From Selaginella moellendorffii (taxonomy: Eukaryota > Plantae > Lycopodiophyta): DNA of 64,000 bases. A model generated the notes under the pieces. That model was not told the DNA's origin, did no database searches, and was given only the letters and a program-made list of their open reading frames with translations. Positions 467-10,432 of this stretch are shown in pieces; within the stretch, counting starts at the first letter, position 1, and every line of letters starts with the position of its first letter. The translations under genes and the position numbers were made by a program. The DNA lies in assembly GCF_000143415.4 (NCBI RefSeq), contig NW_003314380.1:206924-270923 (forward strand), in the 5' to 3' direction.

Positions 467-1700
467 TTAAAAGCTTCGACGTGAAAGACCTCCATCAGAG
501 ACTGCATCTTTCTCAGAGATGGCAAGCTTCGTGACATTGTCCCTCCACATTTGGCCTGCTTCTCCCATCATATCCTTCACTGCCTTGTCAACGATCGTGG
601 CATCTGGACTCGGTGGCAAGCGAGAGCCGATCTTCCAATGCTCCACAGCGAGCGCACAGTTAAGTGGCTGGTCGTACAAGAAAGGCCATCCAATCACGGG
701 GACTCCAAGCACGAACGATCGTCTCCAAAAGAGAATTTCATCCACAATGAGTGAGAAACGCACCCACGGAACGATGCTTGAGAATCTGTGTGGACGACAT
801 ATTAAGCAGGTAAAAGAAGAAGCTTACCTTGAGTTGAGGAGCCCAGAAAACAAACTTGCATTTGTCATAACTTGGATCTTAGAAAAGTTTTCGAAGCTCA
901 TTGTTGTCTGATCGTATCACCCAGGCTTCCAAAGGAGACGTAGATGACTGATTTGGACGGCTGCTCGTCCAGCCAGTCGAGGCAGCTCATATCTTCCATC
1001 CAAAAACCACACCTCTCCTGCTCGAGTTCGTACACTCCAACCTGCCCGTCGAATGCAAATGACGGAAGCAATGAACCGATTGGAAGAAACTGTGGTGTGT
1101 CTCTAGCAAGTTGGTCGAGCTGAGATGTTTCGTAGAAAGAGTTTATAAACACCGGTATACCCGAGAGTGAAGTTGGGATCTACGGTGTGAACTTCTTGAA
1201 GATGCAAAGGAAATTCCCATTCAGAAATTGGAGGGAGGCCGGGTACGAAATCTATGATCCTCGAAGGAATAATAAAAACTCAAGTGGAATAGATTAAGAA
1301 GTACCTTTTAGCGGCAGGAGTCCATTTTCCTTGAGCACAAGAAGACCATTCTGGATGCTAAGCCACGAAGCAGAAAATGTTGAAAGAGTCACCTTGCAAA
1401 TCAGGAACTGGCGAGCGACGCCTTGAAGGCTAGTAATTGCTATGTCGATGAGTATGCAAGACACTCTGGGCAGAGAATCATCTGCCATGATATCTCAAAT
1501 AATCTTGGGCACTGCCAGTTTGAGATTCTTCTCCAAGATAGCAGCAAACTGGAGCAGAACCGTAGTGACGGAGAAGGCTTCTGGAATGAAGGCATCCGGT
1601 AAGTAGACAAATCTCAAGTGCTGACCAGTAGCTTGTTGCTCAGTAGCTATAAAAGCCTCCTTTTTGTTTGAGATTAAGAAAGTGATGAAAAATCCATTGA
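467..1700 (-). pseudogene. UDP-glycosyltransferase (family 1 UGT) pseudogene, 5'-truncated
   Basis: Motifs [36 protein letters not shown] and GVPVIGWPFLYDQPLN (PSPG box) are spread over several frames. The HCGWN Trp codon is TGA at 738-740, there is a further stop at 898-900, and the 5' end is replaced by AT-rich DNA near 1700. Confidence 0.9.
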
Positions 1701-3615
1701 TGAAAAATCCATATAAAATCAAATTTATTCTATCTCAATTGCATTCTCTTCTTGCCATGTCATTGTCATCCACCAGTCAACGTCCCTTAGAACCTTCAAC
1801 ACTTACCTTTTCATCTTCTTGTATTAGGTAATATGCTAATTATAATACTATATTGAGATTAAATTTAATTTATCCATTCTTATATATATGATAATAGATT
1901 TATTAATTGGGGTTTATTACTTACCATTTCCATCTACTTTTGGTAAAACAAATGGCAATGCAATGTAGTTTCTTCTTTAATAGTGAAGAGCAATGAAGTT
2001 TAGGACTTAAAATTTTCTATCATGATTTTCAGGTATATATGAAAAATCTAGCAAGAGCTTAGAGATTATGTTAAGGCATAAGACTTTTTGATCTTTAGTA
2101 GGAAATTATATGGTAGTTCTAATAGTTAGACTGCTTTTCTTACTTGCACGATACATCTATTGGTTATTATTTAATTAGCAACTTCAAGAACAAATAGTCT
2201 AACCTTTCTTTTTAACATATTATTGTCTATTAATACATGAGTTTTTATTTTTCCAGTTGAGTTGGGGTCCCTACTAGTAATAATAATATGGGAAGGTATG
2301 CAAAAGTTTTGCAAACTAAAGAAGAATTATTATTCGAGGACACTTTATAAATTAATGTACAAATATTAAGAATTGAACTAAAATATCTTATAGATCAGAT
2401 TTTGTAAAAGATGGAGAAAAGATTAAAATCTTCATATGGGTTCAAAGAAAAAATAATACAATCTTTATTTACTTTATGAAATCTACTAATATATGCTTAA
2501 TTTTACTAATCATACCCAAAAACATTTGTTGTGAACTACCCCCACCTTTAAAGCTAATACCTTGAATGAAAGTTATTATTATTAACGAAAATATTCTTAC
2601 ATTCAAGATGTGTGGTTTTTGAATCATATTTGTTTTTATTAAATTTATTATTTAGTGTTTCAAATAATAACATTTCAACATATATTTATATCTTTTTCCC
2701 AATCCAATTAAACTTTTTTATTAGTAACTAAAGAGAAATTTAGACAAATATATTCATATTTTGTTCACTTGTAAGTTAAATATATATTTAGATGAGCTTA
2801 CTAATAATTTATTTTCTTTTGATTTACTTTAACTCATTTAAAAGCAAAATTGACTACTTACTTTATAAACTTACAATTGAAAGTGCATTATTAGTTAAGG
2901 TTTTCTAAAGCAAATTAAAAATTATAATTATGTATTTGACATGAAAACTCACTAGTTTTATTTTTAAAGTAGACTATTATTATTTCCATGGATATGGATT
3001 TAAATCTAGATCATCAAAAATAATATAACCATTATTTATTCTATGTGTTCTACCAGTATATGCCCAATTTTGCCAACCATACCATGAATCTTTTGTTATA
3101 AATTCTCCTTCACCTCTGAATGTTACACCTTGAAACTTAATAGAGTTAATTAAAATATCTTTGCATTCTTGGTATATTTTTCTATCATAATATTTTTTAT
3201 CAAATTGATCATTTAATTTTTCTCTCCAAATAATAGAATTACCATATAAATTACAGCTATTTAGAGCATTTAGCATATCTGGTTTCCAATCAACTAAAAA
3301 CAAAATTGCTAGAAATGAAAAAAAATCAATTATATACATACTTGGTTTACTTGTTAAGTTGAATAAATTTGCTGATGAGCTGACTAATATAATTTTAATT
3401 AAAAGAATAAAAATAATTACTAATTTAGTTGCCATTGTATATGCTATAATTTAATTCTGAAAAATTCAGTTTAAATACTGAATAGTCAAACTTCTTTTTC
3501 TGAGTTTCCAATTTCTTTTTCAGAGTTTTCAATGAAGTCAAGTAAAATTAAATAAATTAATTCTCTCCTATATCCTAAGCATAACGTATATTTTTACAAA
3601 AAAAAATAAAAAAAT
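1700..3615. other. Very AT-rich, CpG-poor island interrupting the UGT 5' end
   Basis: Abrupt composition change at about 1700, with a tandem gatgaaaaatccat at the junction. Composition returns to normal at about 3620. Confidence 0.6.
2980..3435 (-). CDS. Small putative secreted protein of unknown function (about 135 aa if the 48-nt intron 3294-3341 is spliced)
   Basis: Open 151-codon ORF in AT-rich DNA with a hydrophobic signal peptide (MATKLVIIFILLIKIILVSSS) and an in-frame gtatgt...ttttag intron. Confidence 0.6.
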   Translation of the reverse strand: MATKLVIIFILLIKIILVSSSANLFNLTSKPSMYIIDFFSFLAILFLVDWKPDMLNALNSCNLYGNSIIWREKLNDQFDKKYYDRKIYQECKDILINSIKFQGVTFRGEGEFITKDSWYGWQNWAYTGRTHRINNGYIIFDDLDLNPYPWK

Positions 3616-3645
3616 GAGTCAATTTTATATTTTTTCTGCCATAAA

Positions 3646-6600
3646 TCACAAGCTTGCTGTTGGTTTTCCAACGCTGTGCTCCATTTTCGCCCTCAATGCC
3701 TTCCTCCTCGCTAGAAAACCTCTTGCTGCTGCTTGTATTCTCGTGGCTGCGGTGACGCGTGATGACTCCTCGTGCTGCTCAACTTGCTGTATGGTTCGTT
3801 TTGCTACAAATCTCGCAGCTCGTTGTATCTTTGTTGCTGCGATGTGGTTTTGCCCCGGTGTGGCTTGAATTCGTATGCCCGAAGCAACGTAGTCTGCATG
3901 TTTTTGCTCCTGTCGAACTTGTAGTCTCAGTAAATATCTCCTCGTAGCTACTTGTATCTTTCTGGCCGCGATAACTTCCAGTTCTTGTGGCTTGTGAGCC
4001 TGTTCTTGTTCGTGTTTTTGCCTCGCTGCTTTCTTTCTTGCCAGAAACCCCCTTGCGACTGCCTGAAGTTTAGTGGCCGCCTCAACTTCTTCTAGCTTTT
4101 CAATTCCTCCAGTGGCTGCTCTCTCCTTGGCCAGCTTGGCCCTTACAAACGCTTGAATCTTTTTGGCAGCGGTTTCTTCTCGCTCGTGCTTCTGGAAGCT
4201 ACCCCGACTGGCTTTTGCTGCTTTCCTCCTCGCTATAAACCCCCTCGCAAGGGCTTGTATTTTAGTGGCTGCCTCTTCTTTTGAGTTCTGTTGCTCTTGT
4301 TCCTGGTTTTGGCCTTCACTGCCTCTGGCAAATCTCCTCCTCACCAAAAATCCCCTCACAAGAGCTTCGATTTTCGTGGCGGCACCACGTATGTAAACGC
4401 TTTGGATTTGCTTCTCTCTCTCAATTCGTAGTGTAAGAGGTAGACCCTGCGATCAGAGCACACAACATTCTTTGAGAGAGATTGAGAGGAAGATAAGAAC
4501 ATAAAACTCTCAACTGTTGGTCCGATCTTGTACAACGTGAACGTTTCCAGGAGCTGCTTGAATGGAATTCCTTTGTTTGGAACTCGAAAGCTCATAACCT
4601 CAAACTCAATCCTCAAGTACCTGGACGAGAAGCGGCAAAATAAATGAAAGCCTCTGATTGGCCAGCTTACCATTGCACGGTGGAGTTGTGTCGTCGTCCC
4701 AGAGGAACACCCAGAGCGTTCACAAAGTTTCGAAGTTTGTGCATTCCAATGTATCCCGAAGCTCTGCATTTTAGAAAAAGATAAAATGAGAAAGGTTAAA
4801 GACCACATTTCTTACTCTGGATCGAAGGGCTGCTGAGCCCATAGCGCTTTAAATGCAAGCAGGTGTTCAGGCGAGACCATAGAATTCTCGTTAACCAGCC
4901 CGAAAGTGATGGCATCCAGGATCAAGGCTACGAACAAGTTCATGAATATGAAACTCGATATCACCACCAGGCATACGAAATAGATGATTCCAGCAAACGG
5001 ATGACCACAGTCATTCCTCGCTAAAGAGTCTCCCTTTGTACACTTTGGCGAGTCCACCATCACGTCGACCATGATACAAGACCAGTTGTCAAGCGTGGAA
5101 ACCTGCAGCATAAGCTCTGAATACAACACAGGCGACTGTACCGAAGCTTACTTGGAAGACGGTAATGAAGGAGTTGACGAACGTTCGAAAGTTAAGCGTG
5201 GGACCAATGCAGGTTCCTTCTGCGACATGACTAAACATCTGGAAGCCAATACCAGAGAACGCGAACAGGAAGACACCGAGAAGAACCATGATCTCTCCCA
5301 TAGTCGGCAGGCATATGACCATAGTTCTCATGATCACCCGTGCTCTCGGTACATGAGGAATGATGCAGAAAACTCGAGCAATGTAAGCAAATCGACAAAC
5401 ATAACCTCTAGGTGTTCCTTTCTTTCCCATCAAGCCTGAAGCTGCCAATATAGATATCGCTGCTTCCATGTGTTTGGAGTGCTCGTATTTGTAAACTTCG
5501 AACTGCAAACACACACTTGAACCTCAAGCATTTATCTAAGAACGCACAGACCTCATCACCAAGAAATTTGATCAAGGACTCCAATAAAAAATACGTCGTA
5601 AGAGCAACGTGAGCTTTCTGGCGGCGCATAGAAACATAAGCCGGCTGGCCAGCGTAGTTCGTTGACAAGAGTGCAGCGTATCCCAACAGGCATATTATCA
5701 TAGTGTTTTGGTAGTGACGATTGCGGATAGCGTAAAAACATAGCTGCCGGACGTAATTCTTCGGTGGCCTCGGTAGCTTTGACGGTTCCAGCTTCTGGAT
5801 GATACGATTCATGTCTCGCCAGAGCTTCTGTCTCTCCGTTAAGAGCTTGGAGCCCGAGTTCTTCCCAAACTCGTTGATAAAAACTCCGATAAACACCCGG
5901 ACTATGAAAAATCCTCCACATATGCAAAACGCCACGAAGAAAATGGCATAAGCCGGACTGTTGTCCCGTTGCGGCTGCTTGTTTTCGCCAACGATATCCA
6001 TCACGGGGTATAGCCAGTTTGTAACCCAGTTGTCGAAAGTCGAGCAAACGAATAAAGAGAGGAAGGCATTACCAATGCTGTCAAAGTGGAAAGTAGGATT
6101 TGTCCAGGCCCGTGGAACATATATTCCGATGTTGTTGTAGTAATGGCCAGTGCAATAAGCTCGATGAGTAATAGTAGCATCGTTGCACGAGTAAAGAAGG
6201 CCCCTGAATAACTGGACACCGATAGAGCCGAAAACCACGAAGATGAGGAACGTAAACAACAGAACGGCCACTATAGCTGGAACAGTCTTGACGAGATTCG
6301 ACATCAAGCTTTTGAGTTCGCCAAAGCGACAGATGAACCGAAATGGTCGCAGTGCCGTCAATGCATGTATAGCTCGTTGAGAGTTCTCGCTCCAAGTAGC
6401 AAGATTGAGTGCGTCGATGATCAGAAGAAAAAGTTCCAGGATGTTGTAGGGGTCGTTAAAGACTGCACTGGGCGAAGATACGAAGCCTTGAACAAAAACT
6501 CTGAGAGAAAACTCTACAAGGAAGACCTGCGAAAGACCCGTGTGCTAATGTGAAGTTCACAAACACGGAGAGAAACATACTAACCACGAACACAAGCTTG

Positions 6601-9600
6601 TGGAGAACTTTGATAGCCGTGTCGGCGAATACCGGCTCTCCAGTGGCTCGCATCTCAATAACAAGCCAAGTGCTTATAGCGACCCAAGCGATTGAGAACC
6701 AGCGCCACCATCTGCTGTTTAAAACCATCTTGCAAAATCCTGTCACACGACCCTCTTCTCCAAGAAAAGATCTTTGCCTCTCGAGAGTGGGAAAGCTTTC
6801 CTCAAGTGCCTCGTAGTCTGAAAGTTGGAAGGACTCCTTTTTGCGGCGCCTGCCTAGATTTCTAGCCAGCTTGCTAGATACCTTGAAAGGAGGCATGGTG
6901 ATGTCAGCAAGCGTAAGAACAGCATCCTGAAGCGCAGTTCGCGAACCTCTTTTCTCACCAATGTCTGCTGGAAATCCAGAAGCCTGGAGAATCTGTGAAC
7001 CACGACTGATCCTTTGCGGCCTTTCTGTTTCTGTAATGTTCTCTCCCACAGCTGCAGTCGACACTGCCTCCAAGCCAGCTCTAGCACTCTCTGCTGGCTC
7101 AGAAGCTGCTCCTGGAAGCAAACTCGTGTTGTCATATCCCAGTTCCAGGTTTCTGTCAATCTGTCTGCCCCGTCGAGAATGAAAGCCTGCTTTCACTCGC
7201 TCAAAAGCGTTCATCACCCAGCTATCTCTTCCCGTAGAGGCCCGGTTTTGCATGCGCTTGAACATTCTCATGTGCTCGGTCTGCAGGAGAAAAGTTGTGG
7301 AGAGAGAAAACAAGGTTTGGAAAATGCACGAACCCGCTGTATTTTCTTTTTCTCGTTGTCAGTAAGCTCGTTATGCTCTAGTATAACAGCAATGATAAGG
7401 TTCATAATAATATGGACTGTGAGGACGAAGTAAAATATATACAGAAAAGGCGCCACACCACTGCACGTAACAACGATGAAAATGATTTGTCAAGAAAGAT
7501 AGATCTAGCTTACTTATACTCCACCCCGGGCCTCATGGAGTTCCACATTTGATTTGGCCAGGATTCAGCAGTAGTTACCGAGAACCAAAGAAGCATAGTC
7601 TGGAGCATATTATCGTGGTGTCCGCGAGGGTACCCGTCCGTGAACTTATAGTATTGACCACTGTATAACTCCATGCTCACGATAGAAAATATAACGATAA
7701 CTAGCAGGTAAAAGAAGAACACACCCACCAGTGAGCCAACACTTTTGATGCACGTGGCCTGTAAAAAGTAGCTTAGCTGATATATTACCTTCGAAGAAAG
7801 AAGGCTGACCACAACTGACGAATGTTTGTCGACATGTTTCTTGGACAAGTAGAACCACCGCATGATTCGAACTGCCGAGATATTTGGATACGTCCGTGAG
7901 ATTAGTGCTCCAGAAGATACTGCGATTACGAAAAGATCAAACAGGTTCATCCCTGCAAAACTATTCACAGCTCAGATTTGAGGAACTGAAACTTTCGCTT
8001 ACTGTCAGCCATAAATGAAATTGGTCCGTAAGCAAGAAAACGCAGTAGTAATTCTGCTGCAAACAAAACAAGGAGCACCGCTTGAATACCATCTGTGCAC
8101 TGACGTTAAGGTGTACGGTCACAAGGAAAAGACGAGGCTGATGGATACAAAGTGTGTACAAGAACTCCTTAGACATGCCGTATCTGTACAAACATAAGAT
8201 AATCGCGTTAACAGTAACAACCAGTAGTACACCGCGATCAAAACTTGGATGCTGAACAACTGCGCGGCATTTCTCGGATACTGATAAGGCTGCTCTGCCA
8301 CCTCTTCCACTTAATGAACGTTGATAAGTTCTTGAGCCCAATCGGCTGAATCTCATTGAGCTAGTGTGAAAGGTATCTCGAAAAGTCGAGTGAGTGCGGC
8401 TAAAAACTCGGCCGACGCTTCTTTTAATTCTCCTGGATCTGTTTAGAAATCGCAAATGCCATTTCAAATGACGATCATCAGTTATAATGTCGTCCCGGAG
8501 GATGTTCGCCATCACGGTTGCGCTATAAAAGGAGGTCGTGCTTTTACGAGATTTTTTCAAGAGTGCCTAAGAATATTGAATCCCGCTTAGTGTTCCCAGT
8601 GACAAAATCGTCACGTACCTGATGTTCCGCCCTGACTCGAAGAAAAACTCCACTTATCCCAGCAATAAACACATTGCAAAGAAAATATGTCCCAATAATC
8701 ACCAAAGTCATGAAGTATGAATCTGTAAAGCAGTGTCAGGCAGAATTGACTTCGCCAAAGTAAATCTAATACTTGCTCGTTCTCCTTCAGCATCCTTTAC
8801 GCGGTACATTATCAGAGACCATCCTTCCAGCGATACAATCTGGAAAAGAGCTACAATATAAAGCACAAGGTGAAAGGCAACGAACCTGAAACATACTGAT
8901 CAAAGAATACCAGAGGTAATCAAAACTCGTTTGTCCATAGTTAGGATTTCCATACTTCTGCAAATGCAAAGTTGTATGATGAAAACTGCGAACGGCGGAA
9001 CTTTACCAAGCATTTCTGAGTCGAGGGACAACTGTATCCATCGACTACTTTCTTATCACAAAAACGTTCTGGATATGATAGTTGCTTGTCCTGACTTCGC
9101 AAGCACCTAACAGAAATGGGGAGTTCAGCTTAGTGGTGCAATATGCAAAATTTAATTGAGTACCTTTGAGACAATGTCTTTTGCAAAAACTGTGTCCCGA
9201 GCAGCGCATAGAAGACCAACATGAAAAATGTGAGGAGGATAACATTTTGAAGCGGACGGACGCTTCTTTCGACTGCTACCATGATAGCCTGCACAGCATA
9301 GCAGTTTCAGTTCAAAGCTAGAAAAGAAAAGAAAAACATACAATGACATCTGCAAAAAAATGGATGTGCTTCAAAGCTAGAAGGCCTCGAAATGCACGCA
9401 AGACCGCCAAACGTGCAAAATAATCTCTTCCAGTTATGCTTCTAACAATGATGTGTACCCTGTAGCATAGAGATTATGATACGCTCATGAAGCTAGGAAT
9501 CTTACCAGGAATCAATAACAATGGCAAAATCAAGCCTGTTATAAGGGTTTCGAAGGTAAGAGTAAGGTCCCTTGCAGAACCCCAGACAGAGGATCTTCAG

Positions 9601-10432
9601 TAACATTTCGATCCTGTTAAGAAAGCTTTAACGATGAGACAGTTCCATGTAACTTACAAAAGAAAAACTTACGCATAAAGCGTGGTAATGACCCCATCCA
9701 GAAAGTCCAGCTTAAAATCCCTTACATCGGTCCATCGTTGTTCCCGGCTCCCAGCTTTTACTTGGAAAATCAGCACTAAAAGGTGAGATAGGATGAGGAA
9801 TAGCAGCATATATTCCGCTGTCCTGGAAACCAATGTAGCACAAGGTTGTCATAGCTGGATCAGCAAATACAAGGTAGTTTGTTTACTTGCATACTGGTTA
9901 TGGATAAGCACGAAGAGCTTTAGACGCGTTGCGCTGTATTGACTCCAAAACCCAAGGGCACGACCCTCGATTCGAGCTCCAGTTCCTACAGCGCTACGCA
10001 TTGCCTTCCTTCTCAGCAGCTGATAAAAGAAAGAAAACTCTTAAGCCGAGAAGAAGAAAGGAAATGTGTAGCGCTTACCAGCATATGCCTGACTGCTTTA
10101 TAAGCTCTTTTCCAATTTTCCATGGGCATGGAAGAGACTGGCGGGCGTGGAAGAATTTCCAGAGCAGCAATCAATGCGACAGTAGAGGGCTTTTGCCCAT
10201 CGTCTGGTTTGCTCACGCCATGGATAGGAGGGAGCTGATCCTCCCATCGAGGATTCCGAGCTAGGAAATCTGGATCATCCTCTGGATCTCTTTCGCTGCG
10301 CAGCAAATTCCAAATTCTAGACAAGATTTCCATACGAAAGACCGGCGCTTACCTCTGTATGAGCTGAGAGATAGTCTTGGAAGCCACCTCGAGCATCCGA
10401 GAGAGCCTCGCGCTCTTGCGCGTCTCCTCCAT
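3646..10432 (-). CDS. Four-domain voltage-gated cation (Ca2+) channel alpha-1-like subunit with C-terminal IQ repeats, multi-exon
   Basis: Four pore loops (FQIVSLEGW, VTTAESW, CSTFDNW, QVSTLDNW). S6 motifs (IIMNLIIAVILEH, VFIGVFINEF, FMNLFVALILD). S4-like segments (LAVLRAFRGLLALK, LTALRPFRFICR). Post-DIV EF-like region (HLLAFKALWAQQPFDPE) and 7-8 IQ motifs. Start is 10432 (with a 36-nt intron) or 10333. Confidence 0.9.

What the first reader, a model, noticed from the sequence alone, without database searches (positions are those of the whole stretch)
3646..10432. Intact-looking four-domain Ca2+ channel with an E-E-D-D (T-type-like) selectivity filter in a land-plant genome
Seen: filter residues read after splicing are DI SL-E-GW (8825-8827), DII TA-E-SW (7564-7566), DIII TF-D-NW (6032-6034) and DIV TL-D-NW (5088-5090). 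The junctions I checked, including the apparent frameshift near 4360-4450, resolve through GT-AG introns. Established: EEDD is the Cav3/T-type signature (Cav1/2 EEEE, Nav DEKA), and angiosperms lack four-domain Cav channels while chlorophyte algae have them. Inference: a retained ancestral Ca2+ channel, plausibly for flagellated-sperm motility or chemotaxis in a non-seed plant.
Basis: partly seen in the sequence, partly recalled or inferred. Interest (0 to 1): 0.85.

Follow-up and report, generated by a model that had tools for sequence, protein, structure and literature searches.

The report
Four-domain calcium-type channel gene, Selaginella
This spikemoss gene encodes a complete animal-style four-repeat calcium-type ion channel, a kind that reviews say land plants lack. 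Its plant relatives turned up only in lineages with swimming sperm, and it is not a true T-type channel.

Summary
On the minus strand, 10432-3646, 23 exons joined by GT-AG introns of 46-72 nt give an unbroken 1865-aa protein. It is identical to RefSeq XP_024520894.1 of Selaginella moellendorffii. They fall in the same alignment columns as Cav3 EEDD, Cav1 EEEE, NALCN EEKE and Cch1 NEEE.

The gene is transcribed from both haplotypes, and the alleles differ with dN/dS 0.20.

It is not a T-type channel. Land-plant sequences form one clade that roughly follows the species tree: liverworts, mosses, lycophytes, ferns, Ginkgo. Its sister is an EEDE clade containing the green alga Chloropicon. A clade joining plants with Cav3 is rejected (p-AU 3e-91). 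No angiosperm or conifer member was found.

The sperm link rests on this distribution alone.

In the contigs shown from four RNA studies, intron 3 uses a donor 8 nt downstream of the productive one. That shifts the frame and stops translation in repeat I. The productive junction was not among the joints listed.

This copy also carries seven IQ motifs.

The scan found this family before on other DNA of the same genome (s1-402732, s1-431145).

The parts
3646..10432 (-). Whole coding span of the four-domain channel gene (23 exons, 1865 aa) = RefSeq XP_024520894.1, S. moellendorffii
   Evidence: Model built; identical to P0253
10353..10432 (-). Exon 1, with the start codon at 10432-10430
   Evidence: intron 1 (10352-10296, 57 nt) is confirmed by an RNA joint
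10079..10295 (-). Exon 2 (cytoplasmic N-terminus)
   Evidence: Joints 10295/10353 and 10019/10079
9895..10019 (-). Exon 3, productive form (donor CCA|GTATGC)
   Evidence: Frame and homology to paralog B...YNQ|KAEY. This junction is not among the RNA joints shown.
9887..9894 (-). Eight extra bases kept when the downstream donor (GCAA|GTAAAC) is used. This shifts the frame and gives a stop at 9778-9776 in repeat I S1.
   Evidence: Joint 9821/9886 (cut +1), skipping 64, in all four runs; the frame was read; both alleles carry both donors
9673..9822 (-). Exon 4 (repeat I S1-S2). The M146 codon at 9809-9807 is the start of RefSeq isoform X2.
9506..9613 (-). Exon 5 (repeat I S2-S3)
   Evidence: joint 9612/9672
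9342..9459 (-). Exon 6 (repeat I S4; basic residues R, R, -, K)
9164..9288 (-). Exon 7 (repeat I S4-S5 linker and S5). The M269 codon at 9282-9280 is the start of RefSeq isoform X4.
9007..9106 (-). Exon 8 (repeat I cysteine-rich outer loop)
   Evidence: conserved Cys columns C309, C324 and C340
8886..8957 (-). Exon 9 (repeat I pore helix)
8773..8839 (-). Exon 10, with the repeat I filter E370 (8827-8825)
8619..8722 (-). Exon 11 (repeat I S6)
   Evidence: Joints 8722/8773 and 8565/8618
8149..8566 (-). Exon 12 (I-II linker without an AID motif; repeat II S1)
8003..8092 (-). Exon 13 (repeat II S2)
   Evidence: Joint 8092/8149; the loose end at 7952 matches the end of exon 13
7810..7952 (-). Exon 14 (repeat II S3-S4)
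   Evidence: Paralog alignment sets the 51-nt intron 14; the loose end at 7759 matches the end of exon 14
7514..7758 (-). Exon 15 (repeat II S5 and pore), with filter E704 (7566-7564)
7334..7460 (-). Exon 16 (repeat II S6)
   Evidence: Joints 7460/7514 and 7280/7334
6585..7280 (-). Exon 17 (II-III linker; repeat III S1)
5552..6526 (-). Exon 18 (repeat III S2-S6 with filter D1160 at 6034-6032; III-IV linker; repeat IV S1-S2)
5152..5502 (-). Exon 19 (repeat IV S3-S5; S4 keeps only two of the five regular basic positions)
4816..5102 (-). Exon 20 (repeat IV pore with filter D1442 at 5090-5088; S6; start of the C-terminal domain)
4671..4763 (-). Exon 21 (EF-hand-like C-terminal domain)
4515..4620 (-). 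Exon 22 (EF-hand-like C-terminal domain)
3646..4446 (-). Exon 23: a conserved IQ motif plus six further IQ motifs (residues 1625-1846, window about 3694-4386), and the stop codon at 3648-3646
   Evidence: Pfam IQ; motif count

Best explanation
This is a nuclear Selaginella moellendorffii gene for a pore-forming four-domain (4 x 6 TM) cation channel. It belongs to a green-lineage subfamily of the Cav/Nav/NALCN superfamily that the land-plant ancestor inherited. Members were found in liverworts, mosses, lycophytes, ferns and Ginkgo.

Shown: the gene structure, the intact ORF, transcription of both alleles, purifying selection, the position of the acidic E-E-D-D ring at the canonical filter, and the gene's phylogenetic place outside Cav3.

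Inferred: the all-acidic ring makes the pore Ca2+-permeable. Repeats I-III keep S2 charge-transfer motifs and three to four S4 charges each, so opening is probably driven or modulated by depolarisation. Repeat IV has a depleted S4. An EF-hand-like C-terminal domain followed by IQ motifs (seven in this copy) probably docks calmodulin for Ca2+ feedback.

The distribution suggests, without proving it, a role tied to motile sperm, for example control of flagellar beat as with Chlamydomonas CAV2. In the RNA contigs shown, intron 3 is spliced at a donor 8 nt downstream, which truncates the protein in repeat I. Full-length protein may therefore be made only where the productive donor is chosen.
For: The gene model has no stops and all introns are GT-AG. 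It is identical to XP_024520894.1. Sixteen of the 22 introns are supported by spliced RNA contigs from four studies: 14 exact joints plus loose ends for introns 13 and 14. All 15 variant letters in the RNA equal the second haplotype, so both alleles are expressed. The alleles give dN/dS 0.20, with 41 synonymous and 28 non-synonymous changes. Pfam finds Ion_trans four times plus IQ. Solved Cav2.2, Cav1.2 and Nav1.7 score 347, 334 and 330 bits, against Cav3.1 at 279 and NALCN at 244. The filter columns are shared with Cav3, Cav1, NALCN and Cch1, and every plant member reads EEDD except the ferns, which read EDDD. Trees show land plants as one clade (100*), a sister EEDE clade with Chloropicon (100*), and Cav3, HVA Cav and Nav2 elsewhere. 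The AU test rejects plants+Cav3. S4 and S2 motifs were read. The C-terminal domain is conserved from Chloropicon to plants, and its model's best fold matches are Nav C-terminal domain-calmodulin complexes and the NALCN C-terminal domain. Profile search scores fall from at least 2018 bits for plants, to 1167-1599 for the algal-like clade, to at most 717 for everything else, with no angiosperm hit. Unnamed fragments fall inside the liverwort, fern and moss subclades.
Against: No function was measured. Ion selectivity, voltage dependence, calmodulin binding and subcellular location are all inferred from sequence. The repeat IV S4 keeps only 2 of 5 regular charges and repeats I and II each miss one, so gating could be weak or unconventional. 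The RNA contigs shown use the +8 donor that breaks the frame, and the productive junction was not seen here (12 joints were not listed). Transcripts occur in 19 runs of 8 studies, which does not look sperm-restricted, though the tissues are coded. The fold and sequence matches of the C-terminal domain are below the usual significance thresholds (E 0.02-0.3). Absence from angiosperms, conifers, hornworts and cycads was not tested on genomes. It rests only on protein searches whose candidate sets are capped or limited by length.
Confidence: 0.7

Rival explanations
1. It is a plant ortholog of animal Cav3 (T-type) channels, with low-voltage-activated behaviour implied by the EEDD filter.
For: The four filter residues match Cav3. 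The RefSeq pipeline names some paralogs 'T-type'.
Against: Cav3 sits in a different, strongly supported part of the tree. Holding plants and Cav3 together costs 409 lnL units, p-AU 3e-91. Solved Cav3 chains score below Cav1, Cav2 and Nav, and their alignments stop at repeat IV S6. The sister algal clade reads EEDE, so EEDD arose separately.
Confidence: 0.01
2. It is a general Ca2+ entry or excitability channel of vegetative cells in non-seed plants, for example the depolarising Ca2+ conductance of bryophyte action potentials. On this reading it is not a sperm channel, and its loss in most seed plants is unrelated to flagella.
For: Near full-length transcripts are present in 19 runs of 8 studies, and spliced contigs occur in all four runs examined. 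The molecular basis of liverwort action potentials is still described as unknown (PMC8067100).
Against: The transcripts shown carry the frame-breaking donor. Retention in Ginkgo, with no conifer or angiosperm hit found, fits the pattern known for flagellar genes such as dyneins (PMC9237703) and CAPE (PMC5159850).
Confidence: 0.3
3. It is a voltage-insensitive or only weakly voltage-modulated leak or sensor channel working like NALCN or fungal Cch1, rather than a depolarisation-activated channel.
For: S4 charges are reduced, most of all in repeat IV (2 of 5), a count similar to NALCN in the same alignment. FastTree puts the green clade outside the Cav/Nav half of the tree, near oomycete sequences and not far from NALCN/Cch1, with weak support of 82-86.
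Against: The filter is neither EEKE nor NEEE. NALCN+Cch1 form their own clade (98-100*) apart from the plants. Solved NALCN scores lowest among four-domain channels. The S2 F/Y-x-x-E-x-x-x-K/R motif is kept in all four repeats, and repeats I-III keep 3-4 S4 charges.
Confidence: 0.15
4. This locus is a decaying or non-functional copy. It is transcribed, but unproductive splicing at intron 3 keeps it from making a channel, and the paralogs B and C do the work.
For: The +8 donor is the form in the contigs shown from all four runs. Paralog B has one strong donor (GTAAGC) at this site and no second one. A-like short copies exist whose models look broken (P0001).
Against: Both alleles keep a 1865/1866-aa ORF, with dN/dS 0.20 and exons less diverged than introns (1.23% against 1.68%). 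RefSeq models a full-length isoform X1. N-terminal or repeat-I variants are also annotated for paralogs B and C, which looks more like regulation than decay.
Confidence: 0.1
5. The sequence is a contaminant or a recent horizontal acquisition from a protist or an animal.
For: Automatic names are animal-like ('muscle calcium channel', 'sodium channel').
Against: Introns are 46-72 nt throughout. Both haplotypes carry the gene between the same neighbours, at 97.9% identity over 10.6 kb. The plant clade roughly follows plant phylogeny.
Confidence: 0.01

Closest known systems
Green-algal four-domain channels of the Chloropicon primus type ('voltage-gated calcium/sodium channel protein', P0317), with unnamed marine-metagenome relatives
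   Same: They form the sister clade with 100* support. They share the four-repeat layout, the conserved outer-loop cysteines, the EF-hand-like C-terminal domain and one IQ motif.
   Different: Their filter reads EEDE rather than EEDD. Repeat IV S4 has all five regular charges in Chloropicon against two here. They are only about 30% identical. None has been characterised experimentally, as far as I know.
Animal Cav3 (T-type) channels
   Same: The E-E-D-D filter sits in the same columns, and there is no AID motif for a beta subunit.
   Different: They lie on a different branch of the family, and a shared clade is rejected. The window protein's alignments to solved Cav3 chains end at about residues 1500-1535, before the EF-hand-like/IQ region, while Nav alignments run to about 1613. 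The residues flanking the filter also differ: TAESW, TFDNW and TLDNW here against TQEDW, SKDGW and TGDNW.
Animal high-voltage-activated Cav1/Cav2 and Nav channels
   Same: These give the highest scores among solved structures. An EF-hand-like C-terminal domain is followed by an IQ helix, and the best fold matches are Nav C-terminal domain-calmodulin complexes.
   Different: The filter is neither EEEE nor DEKA. There is no AID motif, whereas the control Cav1 has one, and no IFM motif. Pfam GPHH and Ca_chan_IQ are not matched. The protein falls outside their clade.
NALCN and fungal Cch1
   Same: Four repeats, with depleted S4 charges in repeat IV.
   Different: Their filters read EEKE and NEEE. 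They form a separate, well-supported clade and give the lowest similarity scores.
Chlamydomonas CAV2, the flagellar voltage-dependent Ca2+ channel (Fujiu 2009, cited in PMC5824947)
   Same: It is a green-lineage four-domain channel that controls flagellar waveform, and it is the functional model for the sperm hypothesis.
   Different: CAV2 has an EEEE filter according to PMC5824947. CAV2 itself was not in my trees. The one chlorophycean sequence included (Edaphochlamys, SESE filter) falls in the Cav/Nav half, not with the plants.

Membership tests
Four-domain voltage-gated cation channel superfamily (Cav/Nav/NALCN/Cch1) | Four homologous 6-TM repeats on one polypeptide | tested here: met
   Pfam Ion_trans matches four stretches, E 5.7e-131; colinear alignment with solved Cav and Nav chains
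Four-domain voltage-gated cation channel superfamily (Cav/Nav/NALCN/Cch1) | A P-loop in each repeat contributes one residue to a selectivity ring at conserved positions | tested here: met
   E370, E704, D1160 and D1442 share columns with the rings of Cav3, Cav1, NALCN and Cch1
Four-domain voltage-gated cation channel superfamily (Cav/Nav/NALCN/Cch1) | S4 helices with basic residues at every third position, plus S2/S3 counter-charges | tested here: met
   Repeats I-III keep 3-4 charges and repeat IV only 2; the S2 F/Y-xx-E-xxx-K/R motif is present in all four repeats
Cav3 / T-type | E-E-D-D selectivity filter | tested here: met
Cav3 / T-type | Descent within the Cav3 clade | tested here: not met
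   Cav3 forms its own 100* clade on the other side of the tree; the AU test gives p 3e-91
Cav3 / T-type | I-II linker 'gating brake' helix-loop-helix | not tested
   No reference motif or profile was at hand
Cav3 / T-type | Low-voltage activation and fast inactivation | not testable with these tools
   Needs electrophysiology
Cav1/Cav2 (HVA) | E-E-E-E filter | tested here: not met
   D in repeats III and IV
Cav1/Cav2 (HVA) | AID motif for the beta subunit in the I-II linker | tested here: not met
   A regex finds none, while the control nematode Cav1 (P0179) matches
Cav1/Cav2 (HVA) | C-terminal EF-hand-like domain with an IQ motif | tested here: inconclusive
   Pfam IQ is matched, but GPHH and Ca_chan_IQ are not; the EF-like domain matches Nav C-terminal domains only weakly (E 0.02-0.3)
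NALCN / Cch1 | EEKE (or EKEE) or NEEE filter, and descent within that clade | tested here: not met
   Filter; NALCN+Cch1 is a separate clade at 98-100*
Green-lineage clade (land plants plus Chloropicon-type algae) | Monophyly with the other plant sequences and with the EEDE algal clade | tested here: met
   100* in FastTree and in IQ-TREE PMSF; bit-score gap in the profile search

The most novel reading that the evidence does not exclude
The land-plant EEDD channels are the missing voltage-dependent Ca2+ channels of plants with swimming sperm. They would act in the spermatozoid, at the flagella or plasma membrane, to steer motility or chemotaxis, and they would have been lost together with flagella in conifers, Gnetales and angiosperms. 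Their output would be gated by alternative splicing around the first voltage sensor: the frame-breaking +8 donor here, and N-terminal or S1 variants in paralogs B and C. Full-length channel would then be made only in the male germ line. This copy's seven-IQ tail would make it an unusually calmodulin-loaded channel.
Probability: 0.3. Interest if true: 0.85.

Novelty: new member of a known kind. Interest (0 to 1): 0.7.

Why it matters
Reviews and surveys state that land plants, or vascular plants, lack four-domain voltage-dependent Ca2+ channels (PMC5824947, PMC5111745, PMC5983822). Here a vascular plant has at least three full-length, expressed, constrained loci. Orthologs exist in liverworts, mosses, ferns and Ginkgo. 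No paper in the searchable library names any of these genes.

That changes the picture of how the plant Ca2+ toolkit evolved: the channel was lost gradually, within seed plants, rather than at the origin of land plants. It also gives concrete candidates for two open questions. One is the Ca2+ channel that controls plant sperm motility. The other is the depolarising Ca2+ conductance of bryophyte action potentials.

Finally, it shows that an EEDD filter arose twice, which is useful for understanding selectivity.

Tried and rejected
- **AU test on 47 rows with the mixture model.** It did not finish in two tries. I repeated it on 24 rows with LG+G4.
- **Literature searches.** I searched for gene identifiers and for any mention of four-domain Cav channels in Selaginella, Marchantia or bryophytes. 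No paper names these genes.
- **Supplement searches.** I searched the supplements of two Marchantia spermatogenesis papers for Mapoly0069s0001 / Mp2g23520 and found nothing, so I have no expression evidence for the sperm link. The Cycas sperm preprint does not mention such channels.
- **36-nt intron 1.** I rejected this alternative in favour of the 57-nt intron, on paralog alignment and an RNA joint.
- **Alternative splice choices for introns 12 and 14.** I resolved them by frame, by paralog alignment and by RNA.
- **P0001 (XP_024536113.1) as a guide for the model.** I rejected it because it matches the window through out-of-frame and intron-like stretches.
- **C-terminal domain alone.** Sequence and fold searches gave coherent but sub-threshold matches.
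- **Not possible here.** Read laying allows a single call, so I could not list the 12 unshown joints or learn the tissues of the coded runs.
Full report
**What is there.**
The stop-free blocks on the minus strand between 10432 and 3646 carry four Ion_trans matches and a tail of IQ motifs. I joined the blocks by hand, using frame, GT-AG sites and tblastn alignments of a Selaginella paralog.

The result is 23 exons and 22 introns of 46-72 nt, all GT-AG. The CDS is 5598 nt and encodes 1865 aa with no internal stop. The model is identical, residue for residue, to RefSeq XP_024520894.1, 'muscle calcium channel subunit alpha-1-like isoform X1 [Selaginella moellendorffii]'. The window is therefore S. 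moellendorffii, and an annotation pipeline had already reached the same structure.

**Are these the filter positions?**
In alignments of 131 and 77 four-domain channels, the four residues fall in the same columns as:
- the EEDD of named Cav3 proteins (TLEGW / TQEDW / SKDGW / TGDNW);
- the EEEE of a nematode Cav1;
- the EEKE of mite NALCN;
- the NEEE of fungal Cch1.

Every land-plant member with the region present reads EEDD, except the ferns, which read EDDD.

**Transcription and splicing.**
Nineteen runs from eight studies hold at least half of the gene's sampled words. I laid contigs of four runs from four studies on 4420-10419. They are spliced, with CT..AC ends on the plus strand, so they are RNA.
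- Joints reproduce introns 1, 2, 4, 10, 11, 12 and 15-22 exactly.
- Loose ends at 7759 and 7952 match the ends of exons 14 and 13.
- All 15 variant letters in the contigs equal the second haplotype (GL377652.1), so both alleles are transcribed.

There is one discrepancy. In all four runs intron 3 is cut at 9886..9823 (64 nt, donor GCAA|GTAAAC), not at 9894..9823 (72 nt, donor CCA|GTATGC). The eight extra bases shift the frame and give a stop at 9778-9776, inside S1 of repeat I. Twelve joints were not listed and contigs drop minor forms, so the productive junction is neither shown nor excluded.

Several further facts bear on this:
- RefSeq annotates both forms: X1 is full-length and X2 starts at M146.
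- Both alleles carry both donors.
- Paralog B has a single strong donor (GTAAGC) at this site.
- RefSeq lists N-terminally truncated ORFs starting at M269 for loci A and B. For locus C it lists an in-frame loss of residues 147-169 in repeat I S1, and a 117-aa N-terminal truncation.

Variation around the first voltage sensor therefore recurs in three paralogs.

**Selection.**
The two haplotype alleles differ at 1.23% of exon sites and 1.68% of intron sites. There are 41 synonymous and 28 non-synonymous changes, giving dN/dS 0.20, and both ORFs are intact.

**What family?**
Against solved structures, the scores are:

| Solved channel | Bits |
|---|---|
| Cav2.2 | 347 |
| Cav1.2 | 334 |
| Nav1.7 | 330 |
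| Cav3.2 | 297 |
| Cav3.1 | 279 |
| NALCN | 244 |

Protein searches found plant relatives in:
- Selaginella: three full-length loci, each on two haplotype scaffolds, plus shorter A-like models;
- Diphasiastrum, Ceratopteris, Adiantum, Ginkgo, Marchantia, Riccia, Sphagnum and Ceratodon.

No angiosperm or conifer protein appeared. In a profile search the scores fall from at least 2018 bits for plants, to 1167-1599 for an algal-like group, to at most 717 for everything else.

The trees agree with one another: FastTree on 77 and 89 rows, and IQ-TREE with LG+C20 PMSF on 47 rows.
- The land plants form one clade (100*). Its internal order is bryophytes against tracheophytes, then lycophytes, ferns and Ginkgo.
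- Its sister (100*) is a clade with an EEDE filter. That clade holds the chlorophyte Chloropicon primus and unnamed metagenome sequences.
- Cav3, Cav1-type, Nav2 and many protist channels lie on another strongly supported branch.
- NALCN and Cch1 form a third branch.
- A tree that holds plants and Cav3 together is worse by 409 log-likelihood units, p-AU 3e-91 (24 rows, LG+G4).
- Unnamed transcript fragments fall inside the liverwort, fern and moss subclades. One short fragment is unresolved at the base of the plant clade.

The EEDD ring of plants and of Cav3 therefore arose independently. Vertebrate Nav1 and Chlamydomonas CAV2 were not in the trees.

**How it probably works (inferred).**
- **Voltage sensors.** All four repeats keep the S2 F/Y-xx-E-xxx-K/R motif. 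S4 keeps R,R,-,K in repeats I and II, and three to four charges in III. Repeat IV keeps only two of five, whereas Chloropicon has all five there.
- **Outer loops.** The cysteines are conserved across the clade.
- **Linkers.** The I-II linker has no AID motif, although the control Cav1 has one. The III-IV linker has no IFM motif.
- **C-terminal domain.** After repeat IV comes a region conserved from Chloropicon to plants. On its own it matches Nav1.2 and Nav1.5 C-terminal EF-hand-like domains only weakly (E 0.04-0.3). A model of it has mean pLDDT 73.5. Its best fold matches are Nav1.4, Nav1.5 and Nav1.2 C-terminal domains bound to calmodulin, and the NALCN C-terminal domain (E 0.02-0.07, below the usual threshold).
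- **IQ motifs.** An IQ motif follows at a conserved place. This copy alone adds six more, for seven in all.

The most likely reading is a depolarisation-activated or voltage-modulated, Ca2+-permeable channel with calmodulin feedback.

**Biological role.**
The distribution matches that of genes tied to flagellate sperm, such as dyneins and CAPE (PMC9237703, PMC5159850). That is the only evidence for the sperm idea. Two supplement searches for the Marchantia ortholog found nothing. Broad presence in public RNA, and the still unidentified Ca2+ conductance of liverwort action potentials (PMC8067100), keep a vegetative role open.

**Novelty.**
Surveys and reviews state that embryophytes or vascular plants lack these channels (PMC5824947, PMC5111745, PMC5983822). 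I found no paper naming these genes. The genes are, however, in RefSeq under automatic animal-style names. This scan had also already reported the family on other pieces of the same genome (s1-402732, s1-431145). My independent tests on this locus agree with those notes.

**Limits.**
- Tissue identities of the runs are coded.
- Absence in other plant groups rests on protein searches, not on genomes.

Noticed in passing
window 3694-4386 (-), residues 1625-1846: This copy has seven IQ motifs spaced about 30-40 residues apart in its tail. Paralog B, Diphasiastrum and Marchantia have one at the conserved place and paralog C has none by the same pattern. RefSeq isoform X3 replaces most of this tail.
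   Followed up: partly
window 4468, 6843-6895, 7876-7921, 8357-8417, 10175-10212: All 15 variant letters seen in the RNA contigs equal the second haplotype allele (GL377652.1), so both alleles are transcribed. Different runs show different subsets.
   Followed up: yes
window 2000-3650: A 1.6-kb AT-rich stretch (GC 23%) lies directly 3' of the gene. It holds a 151-aa ORF (2980-3435, minus strand) with no Pfam match. Most of the stretch also lies in the aligned blocks of the second haplotype.
   Followed up: partly
window 467-1152 (-): ORF pieces that look like a UDP-glycosyltransferase (PSPG-box-like motif). This is probably the next gene downstream.
   Followed up: no
P0001 = XP_024536113.1 (another scaffold), compared with window 7469-7290 and 8160-8120: This A-like 1102-aa RefSeq model matches the window through an out-of-frame reading of repeat II S6 and through intron-like sequence, and it lacks repeat II S5. 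It is either a pseudogene or a faulty model. P0304 and P0305 are further short A-like models.
   Followed up: partly
RefSeq isoforms of loci A, B and C (P0254, P0259, P0153, P0154, P0263, P0261): All three Selaginella loci have annotated variants that remove or interrupt the first voltage sensor: starts at M146 or M269, an in-frame loss of residues 147-169, and a 117-aa N-terminal truncation.
   Followed up: partly
window 9815-9933, run X1 (table 5c): One low-depth contig replaces this stretch with 30 other letters that resemble the end of exon 3 with a few changes. It probably comes from an A-like paralog or is a chimeric assembly.
   Followed up: no
P0274 (Ceratopteris), P0319 (Adiantum): The fern members have D rather than E in repeat II (EDDD), and V rather than W two residues after the repeat III aspartate.
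   Followed up: no
P0039 (230-aa fragment from a public run): It falls unresolved at the base of the land-plant clade on a long branch. It may come from a lineage not otherwise sampled, such as a hornwort or a streptophyte alga.
   Followed up: no
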